Source of the DNA: Octopus sinensis
Lineage: Eukaryota
Direction of reading: 5' to 3'
DNA length: 64,000 nucleotides
Assembly (NCBI RefSeq): GCF_006345805.1
Contig: NC_042998.1
Span: 141,174,001-141,238,000 of the forward strand
Part shown: one piece after another, positions 41,001 through 42,522 of the stretch
Numbering within the stretch: position 1 is the first letter of the stretch
Layout: every line of letters starts with the position of its first letter
The notes under the pieces: model-generated
What the model saw: only the letters and a program-made list of their open reading frames with translations
The model's database searches: none
Told to the model about the DNA's origin: nothing
Position numbers and translations under genes: made by a program

Positions 41001-42522
41001 TTGAAATTTATAGTAAAACAAAAGACGTATTAGTTTCACGCTCGAGAGACACACACACGAGGGTGTGCTGAAATGTTCCTGGTTTTAGGGGTGTCACGAA
41101 AGGCCTGCGTGGAAGAGCCCAACCGAGTTCTTTTATAGGGCTTAGAATAACCGAAGGACCACTGCAGAAAGTGTGTGAATCTGAGAGGGAGAATATGCTG
41201 AGCAAAATCATAATAACAGATACTCTCGTATTTTCTTTTATCCAAAACCAGGAACTTTTCAGCACCCCTCGTGTATGTGTATTCTTTTATGTTGGTTTCC
41301 TTTTGTTTATGTTCCGAAATATATTTTCAGTTTCCCTTTTATTTTACTAACGAGTTTCCGGCTAGGGGCAGTCTGCTGAGTACAGTGGGTTCATTTTCTG
41401 GATCGTAAAACAAAGACTGCTTCTTTCATATTTCCATGTAAATTGGTAAAAGCCTGCTTCCCATGTCGTTCCTCATATACCACAAGCTTCGTGGCTCTAC
41501 ATTGTGCATTTTCTACCATTTCGATATACTTGTATGAGTGTCGTATTTCAGGTGCAGCCTTAACTAATACTGTGTACTATGTTTTAACGTTTTCATTCAA
41601 TGTACTGAAAGACTCCTTTATAAGTCCCATCGACCTGTGGCTTTTTATATATTCTCTCTGAAGTTTAGGGAGCACTTGGCCTAAGAAATAAATAGCGACC
41701 ATTCCAGTTGTGTTTGGAATTCAATGTCTCTAACCTTAGTTCAATTCGATGAGGTGCGACCTTGGGCTAAACAACAATGCCGGAATGAGACAGACTTCTC
41801 TCTAAAAGATGAGTTAAGTCAAATATGTAAGACATAACTAAACATAATAGATATTTGACTGACCTCAGCATAAACCTGTCCACGTAAGTTAAAGAAAAGC
41901 AAATCAATTGATCAATACATATAGAGAAAGGAAGAAAAAAAAAGACTTATAAAATTGATATTTTGGTACTTATAGGTTGTATATTAGTACATATAAATCG
42001 TTACAAGTTGGACGTATTTCTTATTGCTCCCCCCCCTTGCTTTGTTTTTGTTTTTAATATATATAATGAAATTAATATTTCAGGTATGATAAGAGAACGA
42101 ATTATAACAGTATAAGACGAATAAAGAAATGGAGCGAAGTAGCATCAAAAGTATTATTAACCAAGCAAAACAGTTAGTTGAAATAACTAAATCTACTACA
42201 GGAATCACACGCAAATTAAAGTCGAACAGAAAGGAGAGTGTATAACATATATATGTACATATACATAAATGTATGTAAAATCTAAGGAGGCAATATCAAC
42301 ACACGCCGACTGAATGACGAGAAACTCACACACACCCTAGTTAAAGTCTTCGCGTATCGCAATCCTATTCTCTGCGACAACGAAGAAAGACGTGTCCAGG
42401 AAAGCATATTTGAGTTTTGCTAAATTACTAAGAAGTATAAAAGTTTACATAATCCTGCATGCCTTTTTCTCTCCGGAAACTTTCAACTCCTCCATCGGTT
42501 TCGTCAGCACTTCGTCAGCCAT
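7856..42522 (-). CDS. TARS1: Threonyl-tRNA synthetase (eukaryote cytosolic type), complete 20-exon gene, 714 aa from exon 1a
   Basis: Exons (minus strand): 42463-42522, 32064-32123, 30680-30861, 30167-30282, 29101-29230, 27145-27262, 26682-26746, 24964-25042, 24133-24279, 22615-22713, 21573-21668, 17652-17722, 16720-16882, 15788-15925, 14655-14732, 14343-14443, 12668-12772, 11179-11251, 9153-9267, 7856-8004. Lengths sum to 2145 nt with compatible phases. Motifs: TGS domain, editing domain WHSSAH and DLCRGPH, Zn ligands MNCPGHC/LHRNE/VHRA, motif 2 [13 protein letters not shown], motif 3 [10 protein letters not shown], anticodon-binding [20 protein letters not shown]. Confidence 0.97.
9153..9267 (-). 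CDS. TARS1: ThrRS exon 19 ([23 protein letters not shown])
   Basis: ag/gt bounded, 115 nt. Confidence 0.97.
10221..10690. repeat. Tandem array, 3 units of ~154-161 bp
   Basis: Units start ACCATTATAGGTGTCTACTC at 10221, 10382, 10537. Confidence 0.92.
10691..10930 (+). mobile_element. Repeat family D with (GAT)n tail (RTE-type 3' end, probably non-autonomous)
   Basis: GGTTGGCGTTAGGAAGGGCATCCAGC...AAAACGGACGTTAAACGATGATG; copies at 8200-8418, 11595-11900(-), 26130-26362, 32940-33157, 34165-34590(-), 34665-34832, 61845-61990, 62011-62215(-). Confidence 0.8.
11179..11251 (-). CDS. TARS1: ThrRS exon 18 ([14 protein letters not shown])
   Basis: ag/gt bounded, 73 nt. Confidence 0.97.
12668..12772 (-). 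CDS. TARS1: ThrRS exon 17 ([26 protein letters not shown])
   Basis: ag/gt bounded, 105 nt, motif 3. Confidence 0.98.
14343..14443 (-). CDS. TARS1: ThrRS exon 16 ([28 protein letters not shown])
   Basis: ag/gt bounded, 101 nt. Confidence 0.97.
14655..14732 (-). CDS. TARS1: ThrRS exon 15 ([14 protein letters not shown])
   Basis: ag/gt bounded, 78 nt, GDGAFYGPK motif. Confidence 0.97.
15565..15607 (-). ncRNA. Minimal type-I hammerhead ribozyme-like motif (Penelope-associated type), sense in ThrRS intron 14
   Basis: GUCA-CUGAUGA-GGUCA...UGAU-GAAA-GCGC-UU|UGAC: 4-bp stem I, palindromic stem III AAAGCGCUUU. Confidence 0.55.
15788..15925 (-). CDS. TARS1: ThrRS exon 14 ([12 protein letters not shown]...[10 protein letters not shown])
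   Basis: ag/gt bounded, 138 nt. Confidence 0.97.
16720..16882 (-). CDS. TARS1: ThrRS exon 13 ([42 protein letters not shown])
   Basis: ag/gt bounded, 163 nt, motif 2. Confidence 0.98.
17652..17722 (-). CDS. TARS1: ThrRS exon 12 (ENMF...[10 protein letters not shown])
   Basis: ag/gt bounded, 71 nt, Zn-ligand Cys. Confidence 0.97.
19036..21228 (+). mobile_element. hAT (Buster/Charlie-type) DNA transposon, near full-length, frameshifted (ThrRS intron 11)
   Basis: TIRs CAGTGTCTGCC / GGCAGACAC(T)TG; peptide remnants [53 protein letters not shown]. Confidence 0.9.
21573..21668 (-). CDS. TARS1: ThrRS exon 11 ([12 protein letters not shown]...[11 protein letters not shown])
   Basis: ag/gt bounded, 96 nt, class II motif 1 region. 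Confidence 0.97.
22615..22713 (-). CDS. TARS1: ThrRS exon 10 ([21 protein letters not shown])
   Basis: ag/gt bounded, 99 nt. Confidence 0.97.
24133..24279 (-). CDS. TARS1: ThrRS exon 9 (NSSTYWEG...RIYGISFP...RDHRKIG)
   Basis: ag/gt bounded, 147 nt. Confidence 0.97.
24479..24700. repeat. Degenerate ~20-bp minisatellite (CATGTAGCTTTACAATTATGA)
   Basis: About 10 diverged units in ThrRS intron 8. Confidence 0.75.
24964..25042 (-). CDS. TARS1: ThrRS exon 8 ([21 protein letters not shown])
   Basis: ag/gt bounded, 79 nt, DLCRGPH motif. Confidence 0.97.
26682..26746 (-). CDS. TARS1: ThrRS exon 7 ([22 protein letters not shown])
   Basis: ag/gt bounded, 65 nt. Confidence 0.97.
27145..27262 (-). CDS. 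TARS1: ThrRS exon 6 (QVSSNDY...[10 protein letters not shown]...LEMFK)
   Basis: ag/gt bounded, 118 nt. Confidence 0.97.
27470..28000 (-). mobile_element. RTE-like LINE 3' fragment, decayed (ThrRS intron 5)
   Basis: [13 protein letters not shown]...KEWIG similar to the RTE C-terminal KL.YFGH...GKR.RGRP..W.D..KEW region; many stops. Confidence 0.55.
29101..29230 (-). CDS. TARS1: ThrRS exon 5 ([15 protein letters not shown]...[11 protein letters not shown])
   Basis: ag/gt bounded, 130 nt, editing-site HxxxH. Confidence 0.97.
29894..30112. mobile_element. piggyBac-like MITE, ~220 bp; further copies near 17866-18045, 21800-22025, 37358-37575, 38498-38718, 58107-58326
   Basis: TIR CCCTTTAGC...AAAGGG flanked by (T/C)TAA; the same internal sequence recurs at least six times. 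Confidence 0.75.
30167..30282 (-). CDS. TARS1: ThrRS exon 4 ([23 protein letters not shown])
   Basis: ag/gt bounded, 116 nt, WD.ERPLE motif. Confidence 0.97.
30680..30861 (-). CDS. TARS1: ThrRS exon 3 ([15 protein letters not shown]...TLPDGK...[10 protein letters not shown]), TGS domain start
   Basis: ag/gt bounded, 182 nt, conserved TLPDG/TTPY motif. Confidence 0.97.
31576..31621 (+). ncRNA. Minimal hammerhead-like motif (ThrRS intron 2, antisense)
   Basis: UCU-CUGAUGA-AGGGAUA...UAUCACA-GAAA-CAGCUGUA|AGA; palindrome ACAGCUGU. Confidence 0.45.
32064..32123 (-). CDS. TARS1: ThrRS exon 2 ([20 protein letters not shown])
   Basis: T-rich tract + cag acceptor, GAG|gtaaac donor, phase 0/0, lysine-rich N-terminal extension. 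Confidence 0.85.
35535..35654. repeat. Long (TA)n microsatellite (many shorter TA/CA/CAT tracts elsewhere)
   Basis: ~120 bp of near-pure TA. Confidence 0.97.
35761..35978. mobile_element. 218-bp foldback MITE (Mutator-like)
   Basis: ~105-bp arms with 6 mismatches; G-terminal; 9-bp TSD taattataa/ttattataa (8/9). Confidence 0.75.
39397..39439 (+). ncRNA. Decayed minimal hammerhead-like motif centred in an inverted repeat
   Basis: CCAC-CUGACGA-AUGUC(AUUGAA)GACAU-GAAA-UGAUU-GUA|GUAG. Confidence 0.55.
41058..41271 (+). mobile_element. mariner-derived MITE
   Basis: ~30-bp TIRs CGAGGG(T)GTGCTGAAA.GTTCCTGG; internal remnant of the QKCV..RGEY transposase tail. Confidence 0.75.
42336..42407 (-). CDS. 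TARS1: Putative alternative first exon 1b encoding a mitochondrial targeting peptide [24 protein letters not shown](VC)
   Basis: ATG at 42407 with A at -3; 4 R + 1 K, no D/E, rich in S/L/T; phase-0 donors AGG|GTGTGT (42335) or TGT|GTGAGT (42329). Confidence 0.72.
42463..42522 (-). CDS. TARS1: ThrRS exon 1a (cytosolic start) [20 protein letters not shown]
   Basis: caacATGG Kozak context; an in-frame stop 10 codons upstream; ends phase 0 at AAG|GCATGC (GC donor), matching phase-0 exon 2. Confidence 0.8.

What the first reader, a model, noticed from the sequence alone, without database searches (positions are those of the whole stretch)
42330..42407. Hidden alternative first exon encoding a mitochondrial presequence: one ThrRS gene for cytosol and mitochondria
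55 nt inside intron 1 an ATG (A at -3) opens [24 protein letters not shown](VC): net +5, no acidic residues, rich in S/L/T/R, with an R-2-type site (LRY|A). It ends at two phase-0 donors (AGG|GTGTGT and TGT|GTGAGT) compatible with exon 2 or exon 3. It is too short for the ORF track. Dual targeting of aminoacyl-tRNA synthetases by alternative 5' ends is established (human KARS1 and GARS1; ThrRS is reported as dual-localised in Drosophila). Its use at this locus is inferred.
Basis: partly seen in the sequence, partly recalled or inferred. Interest (0 to 1): 0.85.

Follow-up and report, generated by a model that had tools for sequence, protein, structure and literature searches.

The report
Octopus ThrRS mitochondrial-isoform first exon
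The short exon is real and gives the octopus threonyl-tRNA synthetase gene a second, mitochondria-type N-terminus, but it is already in the public annotation and is the octopus copy of a layout shared by molluscs, ribbon worms and sea urchins.

Summary
On the minus strand, ATG 42407 opens a 72-nt exon, [24 protein letters not shown]. It ends at AGG|GTGTGT (last base 42336), 55 nt downstream of the cytosolic first coding exon (42522-42463).

The exon is not hidden. The window is Octopus sinensis, and RefSeq lists this product as ThrRS "isoform X1" (XP_029655742.1), joined to exon 2 at 32123. The same N-terminus occurs in O. vulgaris, O. bimaculoides and Argonauta (24/24 residues, three synonymous changes). 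It also occurs in spliced RNA-seq contigs of a more distant cephalopod (19/24 residues, nine codons changed synonymously only).

Mitochondrial import is inferred, not shown. The peptide is basic, has no acidic residues and is amphipathic. Published surveys report no separate mitochondrial ThrRS gene in non-vertebrate bilaterians.

The by-product is more interesting than the finding. The layout of cytosolic exon with a GC donor (AAG|GCATG), short spacer and a 72-nt presequence-like exon recurs in oyster, abalone, a nemertean and a sea urchin. The GC donor is the weakest 5' splice site in the gene, which suggests competition between donors.

The second donor (42330) and a direct join to exon 3 have no support. 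Verdict: real, correctly read, an ordinary member of a known kind.

The parts
42463..42522 (-). Cytosolic first coding exon ([20 protein letters not shown]). The ATG has a strong context (aacaacATGG).
   Evidence: It equals the N-terminus of XP_029655750.1, isoform X2.
42457..42465 (-). GC 5' splice site of the cytosolic exon, AAG|GCATGC. It is the weakest donor in the gene and contains GCATG.
   Evidence: A GC donor is also found at this position in Argonauta, oyster, abalone, Lineus and Diadema.
42408..42462 (-). 55-nt spacer. It is intron for the cytosolic isoform and 5' leader for the presequence isoform. Unspliced read-through of the MADEV frame stops at TAA 42447-42445.
   Evidence: It is 90.9% identical to Argonauta.
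42336..42407 (-). Alternative first coding exon, 72 nt, [24 protein letters not shown] (presequence-like).
42330..42338 (-). Donor used by isoform X1, AGG|GTGTGT (intron starts at 42335).
   Evidence: 718 aa = 24 + 694, and the junction reads ...TLTR|ASKNT in P0229. No database protein carries the extra VC.
32064..32123 (-). Exon 2 ([20 protein letters not shown]). It is in phase 0 at both ends and is the common acceptor for both first exons.
30680..30861 (-). Exon 3, the start of the TGS domain (VKPAPDYIQ...).
7856..30282 (-). Exons 4-20 of the ThrRS gene, shared by both isoforms. All donors are GT.
   Evidence: The translation is identical to P0109 and P0229.
42542..42551 (-). GCGCATGTGC, an NRF-1-like palindrome with one mismatch, about 20 nt upstream of the MADEV ATG. 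This is a candidate promoter element and rests on inference only.
   Evidence: Related GCGCATGCG or CATGCGCA motifs lie at the same place in Argonauta, oyster and the distant cephalopod mRNA.

Best explanation
The segment is the second of two tandem first coding exons of the Octopus sinensis threonyl-tRNA synthetase gene (minus strand, 20 coding exons, 42522-7856).

If the upstream exon (MADEV..., 60 nt) is spliced from its weak GC donor to exon 2, the mRNA encodes the 714-aa cytosolic enzyme. If that donor is not used, the downstream 72-nt exon is spliced from AGG|GTGTGT (42336) to the same exon 2. The mRNA then encodes a 718-aa enzyme whose first 24 residues form a basic, acid-free, amphipathic mitochondrial presequence. 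That isoform is imported and charges the mitochondrially encoded tRNA-Thr. One gene therefore serves both compartments.

Shown here:
- both exons, both junctions and both annotated proteins;
- spliced transcripts of both kinds in another cephalopod;
- strong purifying selection on the peptide;
- the same layout from molluscs to a sea urchin.

Inferred:
- import, and cleavage near R17-Y18|A19 or R24-A25|S26;
- absence of a second ThrRS gene, which rests on the literature.

How the choice is made is only partly resolved. I favour (about 0.55) competition between the two 5' splice sites on one pre-mRNA. In that case the MADEV frame becomes a 25-codon upstream ORF ending at TAA 42447-42445, and the presequence ATG is reached by reinitiation or leaky scanning. 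The alternative is a separate start site inside or after the cytosolic exon.
For: Gene model and junctions.

Identity of the window: it is 100% identical over 40,667 nt to O. sinensis CM016860.1.

Annotated products: P0229 = XP_029655742.1 (X1, MLSW...TLTR|ASKNT) and P0109 = XP_029655750.1 (X2).

Other cephalopods: the same N-terminus is found in O. vulgaris, O. bimaculoides and Argonauta. Intron-free RNA-seq contigs of a more distant cephalopod carry either MLSWIRLSRLSQRIGVRYAKTYNR or MADQPDELTK... joined to the same exon 2.

Selection: Octopus and Argonauta differ by 3 synonymous and 0 non-synonymous changes. Identity is 95.8% over the exon against 50-65% in the flanks.

Presequence features: net charge +5, no acidic residue until position 34, maximal helical hydrophobic moment 0.70, against net -1 for the cytosolic exon.

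Wider conservation: 16 taxa share the consensus MLSRxxLxRLxKRIGxTYxRxxSx. The presequence-like exon is exactly 72 nt and sits beside a GC-donor cytosolic exon in two Octopus species, Argonauta, Crassostrea, Haliotis, Lineus and Diadema.

Donor strength: the GC donor is the weakest of the gene's donors (-3.0 kcal/mol against -5.0 to -11.8).

Transcripts reading through the donor: presequence-isoform RNA-seq contigs from two bivalve-like species carry the unspliced GC donor and about 30 nt of the cytosolic exon in their 5' leader.

Literature:
- mt-ThrRS is absent from bilaterians except vertebrates (PMC4558845).
- Drosophila ThrRS is predicted to be dual-localised (PMC4826098).
- The longer C. 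elegans tars-1 isoform was shown to be mitochondrial (PMC10196762).
- GC donors are enriched in alternatively spliced genes (PMC2490688).
Against: No import prediction program (TargetP, MitoFates, MitoProt) and no experiment were available, so the mitochondrial destination rests on sequence character and analogy.

The O. sinensis genome could not be searched for a second ThrRS gene.

No O. sinensis RNA-seq junction counts were available. Support in this species is the RefSeq model, whose evidence I could not inspect.

Primary-sequence conservation across phyla is unusually high for a presequence. The peptide or its nucleotides may therefore carry an additional constraint.

For the splice-competition sub-model, three points count against it or weaken it:
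- The two cephalopod contigs (L001, L002) begin with an adapter fused inside the spacer and contain no cytosolic-exon sequence. This fits an internal start site.
- The bivalve-like leaders could come from pre-mRNA k-mers.
- The MADEV ATG has a strong context, which would make the downstream ATG poorly translated.
Confidence: 0.85

Rival explanations
1. Same exon and same protein, but the isoform choice is made by transcription start. A second start site inside or just after the cytosolic exon gives an mRNA that lacks the MADEV ATG and the GC donor. Only the GT donor can then be used, and no upstream ORF is involved.
For: Contigs L001 and L002 from the distant cephalopod have an Illumina adapter fused 22 and 49 nt upstream of the presequence ATG, with no cytosolic-exon sequence. 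The L002 leader has no upstream ATG. The strong context of the MADEV ATG would otherwise hamper translation of the downstream ORF.
Against: Under this model the cytosolic pre-mRNA still carries both donors, so a weak GC donor should be selected against. Instead it was found in all seven species examined, from molluscs to a sea urchin. The bivalve-like contigs L013 and L014 extend across the unspliced GC donor and stop about 30 nt upstream. That is what I would expect at a de Bruijn graph branch point if the assembler used k-mers of about 31 nt (my assumption).
Confidence: 0.4
2. The conserved 24-residue peptide is not an import signal, or not only one. It could direct the enzyme elsewhere or mediate an interaction, with mitochondrial ThrRS supplied in some other way.
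For: A consensus such as MLSRxxLxRLxKRIGxTYxRxxSx shared across phyla is more sequence conservation than presequences usually show (general knowledge).
Against: The peptide has no hydrophobic core for a signal peptide. It is Arg-rich, acid-free and amphipathic. The C. elegans long ThrRS isoform, which likewise differs only in its N-terminal extension, is experimentally mitochondrial (PMC10196762). No other mt-ThrRS is reported in non-vertebrate bilaterians (PMC4558845).
Confidence: 0.07
3. The exon is an annotation artefact or splicing noise, a chance ORF inside intron 1.
For: Composition alone is not rare. 3% of ATG-started 24-codon open stretches in the window are acid-free with at least 5 K/R.
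Against: Spliced transcripts exist in another cephalopod. Substitutions are mostly synonymous. The 72-nt length is the same in all seven species examined, from octopus to sea urchin.
Confidence: 0.02

Closest known systems
Caenorhabditis elegans tars-1 (Guo et al. 2023, PMC10196762)
   Same: A single ThrRS gene supplies cytosol and mitochondria. The isoforms differ only by an N-terminal presequence, and the longer form was shown experimentally to be mitochondrial.
   Different: The worm uses two in-frame ATGs on one mRNA, and the presequence is an extension of the cytosolic form. The octopus uses two mutually exclusive first coding exons, each with its own ATG and donor.
Drosophila melanogaster ThrRS, CG5353 (Lu et al. 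2016, PMC4826098)
   Same: It is listed as dual-localised (C+M), encodes two polypeptides, and the longer one was predicted mitochondrial by MitoProt. It is the sole fly match to both human TARS and TARS2.
   Different: The fly exon layout was not examined here. Localisation is a prediction there too.
Human KARS1, and zebrafish hars (PMC5608375)
   Same: One aaRS gene yields cytosolic and mitochondrial enzymes by alternative splicing at the 5' end.
   Different: They have different amino-acid specificities and exon arrangements. A conserved GC donor has not been noted for them as far as I know (own knowledge, not checked).
Human TARS2
   Same: It does the job that the octopus isoform X1 is inferred to do.
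   Different: It is a separate gene, made by duplication of cytosolic ThrRS in vertebrates (PMC4558845). No such gene is expected in octopus.
Regulated GC-AG introns (Churbanov et al. 2008, PMC2490688)
   Same: A weak GC donor is associated with alternative splicing and is paired here with a nearby competing GT donor.
   Different: The regulatory role is inferred here from conservation only and was not tested.

Membership tests
Dual-localised aminoacyl-tRNA synthetase gene (one gene, cytosolic plus mitochondrial isoforms) | Two protein isoforms share the whole catalytic body and differ only at the N-terminus. | tested here: met
   P0109 (714 aa) and P0229 (718 aa) are identical from exon 2 onward. 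Gene model.
Dual-localised aminoacyl-tRNA synthetase gene (one gene, cytosolic plus mitochondrial isoforms) | One N-terminus has the character of a mitochondrial presequence and the other does not. | tested here: met
   Net +5, 0 acidic residues and hydrophobic moment 0.70 for the presequence-like exon, against net -1 with 5 acidic residues for the cytosolic exon. No dedicated predictor was available.
Dual-localised aminoacyl-tRNA synthetase gene (one gene, cytosolic plus mitochondrial isoforms) | The presequence isoform is actually imported into mitochondria. | not testable with these tools
   This needs a GFP fusion, fractionation or a mitochondrial proteome. The only analogy is C. elegans (PMC10196762).
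Dual-localised aminoacyl-tRNA synthetase gene (one gene, cytosolic plus mitochondrial isoforms) | The genome has no separate gene for the mitochondrial enzyme. | not testable with these tools
   The whole O. sinensis genome was not searchable. The literature states that mt-ThrRS is absent in bilaterians except vertebrates (PMC4558845).
Dual-localised aminoacyl-tRNA synthetase gene (one gene, cytosolic plus mitochondrial isoforms) | Both isoform mRNAs are expressed. | tested here: inconclusive
   Both were seen as spliced RNA-seq contigs in a related cephalopod. For O. sinensis itself only the RefSeq models are available.
U2-type GC-AG intron | GC at intron positions +1 and +2, AG at the 3' end, otherwise U2-like consensus. 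The junction cannot be explained by any GT-AG alternative. | tested here: met
   The site reads AAG|GCATGC ... ttttacAG|GCATCT. Sliding the junction gives no other canonical pair (read from the sequence). The protein junction GEKK|ASKNT is in XP_029655750.1.
MPP-cleaved presequence with an R-2 site | Arginine at -2 from the cleavage point, followed by A or S. | tested here: inconclusive
   Two candidates exist, R17-Y18|A19 and R24-A25|S26. The R at position 17 is not conserved in other phyla. The cleavage site cannot be determined from sequence.

The most novel reading that the evidence does not exclude
The tandem unit is an ancient bilaterian switch that sets the ratio of cytosolic to mitochondrial ThrRS. 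The unit consists of a cytosolic exon ending in a weak AAG|GCAUG donor, a short spacer with an early stop (GCA UGA in four taxa), and a 72-nt presequence exon with a GU donor. The switch would work through competition between the two donors. The presequence ORF would then be translated after a short upstream ORF. The GCAUG at the donor, an Rbfox-type motif, could allow tissue-specific tuning. The unit has been kept from the protostome-deuterostome ancestor and was lost in vertebrates when TARS2 arose.
Probability: 0.35. Interest if true: 0.6.

Novelty: new member of a known kind. Interest (0 to 1): 0.33.

Why it matters
For the octopus genome, the result means the product annotated as 'cytoplasmic isoform X1' is most likely the mitochondrial ThrRS. 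It also accounts for the absence of a TARS2-type gene.

More generally, the arrangement seen here is shared by molluscs, a nemertean and a sea urchin: a GC donor, a spacer and a 72-nt exon. It gives a concrete and easily tested model for how a single gene divides an essential enzyme between two compartments. It differs from the two-ATG mechanism demonstrated in C. elegans.

The finding as submitted confirms something expected and already annotated.

Tried and rejected
- The first protein search, with a 146-aa N-terminal query, returned only short fragments and no close cephalopod. A full-length two-isoform profile was needed.
- Exact look-ups of P0109 and P0161 found nothing on record. The arthropod gene layout was therefore not examined.
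- Composition as evidence was rejected as sufficient, because 3% of random ATG stretches look similar.
None of the proteins returned and inspected has either junction.
- An alternative GT donor for the cytosolic exon (TAT|GTAAAC at 42449) was rejected. It gives phase 2 and a stop after joining exons 2 and 3 (worked out by hand).
- The idea that MADEV is only an upstream ORF and MLSW is the sole protein was rejected. Spliced MAD-type mRNAs exist, and the MADNVA motif is conserved across phyla.
- The Pfam scan of transposase-like ORFs in intron 11 and near 5.9 kb gave no hit.
- No genome-wide search for a second ThrRS gene was possible with the collections on hand.
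Full report
**What is at the coordinates**

On the minus strand the sequence reads ...tcaaatATGCTTTCCTGGACACGT...ACTAGG|GTGTGT|GTGAGT. The ATG is at 42407-42405 with A at -3. The ORF is [24 protein letters not shown], 24 codons. The two GT dinucleotides follow bases 42336 and 42330. The description is accurate.

**The gene around it**

A guide tblastn and manual splice-site placement give a 20-exon threonyl-tRNA synthetase gene on the minus strand, 42522-7856, encoding 714 aa.
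- The first coding exon is 42522-42463 ([20 protein letters not shown]).
- Exon 2 is 32123-32064 ([20 protein letters not shown]), in phase 0 at both ends.
- Exon 3 starts at 30861.

Every donor is GT except the first, which is AAG|GCATGC, a GC-AG intron. Sliding the junction yields no other canonical pair. The downstream TAT|GTAAAC would be out of phase.

**The exon is already annotated**

A profile of both putative isoforms found the following proteins:
- P0109, 'threonine--tRNA ligase 1, cytoplasmic isoform X2', 714 aa, XP_029655750.1.
- P0229 in the same 90% cluster, 'isoform X1', 718 aa, XP_029655742.1 in O. sinensis and CAI9717595.1 in O. vulgaris.

P0229 begins [24 protein letters not shown]|ASKNT.... 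It therefore uses the donor at 42336 and the acceptor at 32123.

The window is 100% identical over 40,667 nt to O. sinensis chromosome CM016860.1. The exon is therefore not hidden, but it is labelled 'cytoplasmic'. None of the proteins returned and inspected carries the extra Val-Cys of the second donor or skips exon 2.

**Is it real and coding?**

O. bimaculoides and Argonauta hians models have the same 24 residues. At the DNA level, Argonauta differs from Octopus at three positions in the exon, all synonymous.

Logan contigs L001 and L002 come from runs SRR27666084 and SRR27666088. The species is not given. The protein is 86% identical, and I infer it is a decapodiform cephalopod. These contigs are intron-free, so they derive from transcripts. 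They encode MLSWIRLSRLSQRIGVRYAKTYNR joined to exon 2. L003 and L004, apparently from the same species (runs SRR24189498 and SRR24189493; the protein is identical to P0111 downstream of the first exon), encode MADQPDELTKSMDQINLNNTDKK joined to the same exon 2.

Against octopus, nine codons of the presequence-like exon differ only synonymously and five change the residue (counted).

Octopus-Argonauta identity by segment:

| Segment | Identity |
|---|---|
| Presequence-like exon | 95.8% |
| Spacer | 90.9% |
| Next 60 nt of intron | 88.3% |
| Cytosolic exon | 83.3% |
| Further out | 50-65% |

Composition alone would not have been convincing. 22 of 740 ATG-started 24-codon stretches in the window are acid-free with at least 5 K/R.

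**Is it a mitochondrial presequence?**

The peptide has net charge +5, no acidic residue until position 34, 71% S/L/T/R/A, and a maximal 11-residue helical hydrophobic moment of 0.70. The cytosolic exon has five acidic residues and net charge -1. There is no hydrophobic core of the signal-peptide type.

Neither can be preferred from sequence.

The literature supplies the need for such an isoform:
- Lu et al. list Drosophila ThrRS (CG5353) as C+M, with a longer polypeptide that MitoProt predicts to be mitochondrial (PMC4826098).
- Guo et al. showed experimentally that the single C. elegans tars-1 makes both enzymes and that its N-terminal 41 residues import GFP (PMC10196762).

Import in octopus, and the absence of a second gene in this genome, remain inferences.

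**The arrangement is ancient**

Among the best 120 homologues, many invertebrates have paired isoforms. One starts MAD(N/E)V.... The other starts with a basic, acid-free peptide. Sixteen of the latter, from cephalopods, gastropods, bivalves, nemerteans and a sea urchin, align to the consensus MLSRxxLxRLxKRIGxTYxRxxSx.

I read the genomic loci for Argonauta (L007), Crassostrea angulata (L008), Haliotis cracherodii (L009), Lineus longissimus (L011) and Diadema antillarum (L010) (and 42-44, 49, 50, 58). In each of them the layout is the same:
- a cytosolic exon of 54-60 nt ends in a GC donor: AAG|GCATGC in the octopods, AAG|GCATGA in oyster, Lineus and Diadema, and CAG|GCACGA in abalone;
- a spacer of 34-61 nt follows;
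- a presequence-like exon of exactly 72 nt then ends in a GT donor.

Reading through the GC donor, the cytosolic frame stops within one to five codons, 23-55 nt before the second ATG. In octopus the GC donor has the weakest predicted pairing to U1 of all donors in the gene, at -3.0 kcal/mol. The presequence donors score -5.3 and -5.2, and the remaining donors range from -5.0 to -11.8.

**How the choice is probably made**

A weak upstream donor found in all seven species examined, next to a competing downstream donor, points to alternative 5' splice-site selection on one pre-mRNA. GC donors are known to be enriched in alternatively spliced genes (PMC2490688).

Transcript contigs of the presequence isoform from two bivalve-like species, L013 and L014, have 5' leaders consisting of about 30 nt of the cytosolic exon, the unspliced AAAAAG GCATGA, and the spacer. 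They start about 30 nt upstream of the donor. This is where a de Bruijn graph contig would break at the branch with the cytosolic isoform, if the assembler used k-mers of about 31 nt (my assumption). On this model the cytosolic ORF becomes a 20-25-codon upstream ORF, and the presequence ATG is reached by reinitiation or leaky scanning. That would fit a low demand for the mitochondrial enzyme.

Several caveats apply:
- Pre-mRNA reads could supply the same k-mers.
- The cephalopod contigs L001 and L002 begin with adapter fused inside the spacer, as expected for an internal start site.
- The MAD ATG has a strong context.

I put the splice-competition model at about 0.55 and a separate start site at about 0.4. 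The two may coexist.

**Comparison and novelty**

Functionally this is the octopus member of the dual-localised aaRS class (fly ThrRS, worm tars-1, human KARS1 and GARS1, zebrafish hars). It differs from worm tars-1, the only experimentally dissected ThrRS case, in using mutually exclusive first coding exons rather than two ATGs on one mRNA.

The exon and protein are already in RefSeq. The single-gene status of invertebrate ThrRS is published. The finding itself is therefore a new member of a known kind.

My five literature searches did not turn up a description of the conserved unit of GC donor, spacer and 72-nt exon shared by protostomes and an echinoderm. That is the part worth following up.

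**Verdict**

Interest in the finding as stated is low to moderate.

Noticed in passing
window 42457-42465 (-); L007 2938-2946; L008 4058-4066; L009 4055-4063; L011 3952-3960; L010 3937-3945: The cytosolic first exon ends in a GC donor in all seven species checked, from octopus to sea urchin. It reads AAG|GCATG in six and CAG|GCACG in abalone. GCAUG and GCACG are also Rbfox-type motifs (own knowledge, untested).
   Followed up: partly
window 42276-42335 (-): The first 60 nt of intron after the presequence-like exon are 88% identical between Octopus and Argonauta, against 65% further in. This may be a splicing-regulatory block.
   Followed up: no
window 42445-42450 (-): An ATG immediately followed by TAA (a start-stop) lies in the spacer, in frame with the read-through cytosolic ORF. 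The corresponding position in the distant cephalopod mRNA reads CTG TAA.
   Followed up: no
window 42542-42551 (-): GCGCATGTGC, an NRF-1-like palindrome, lies about 20 nt upstream of the MADEV ATG. Similar motifs occur in Argonauta (TGCGCATGCGTG), oyster (CACATGCGCAC) and the distant cephalopod mRNA leader (CATGCGCAG).
   Followed up: no
window 43978-46743 (-): An uninterrupted 921-aa ORF of a non-LTR retrotransposon (Exo_endo_phos plus RVT_1) lies 1.45 kb upstream of the ThrRS start on the same strand. It may be a recently active LINE.
   Followed up: partly
window 10215-10689: A 156-bp unit is repeated 3.0 times (95% matches) inside intron 18 of the ThrRS gene, in a locally GC-richer stretch.
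   Followed up: no
window 51007-51306 (-) and 58892-59158 (+): These are fragments of DNA transposases, DDE_1 (pogo/Tigger type) and Transposase_1 (mariner type).
   Followed up: partly
L006 (O. vulgaris), gene end; protein P0231: O. vulgaris has an annotated 702-aa variant with a different C-terminus (...[23 protein letters not shown]). This is an alternative last exon that would truncate the anticodon-binding domain.
   Followed up: no
proteins P0112, P0232-P0234 (O. bimaculoides): The O. bimaculoides ThrRS models lack exon 11 (SEYWKRGF...HYA), and some read into an intron ([10 protein letters not shown]). These are probably model or assembly errors rather than biology.
   Followed up: no
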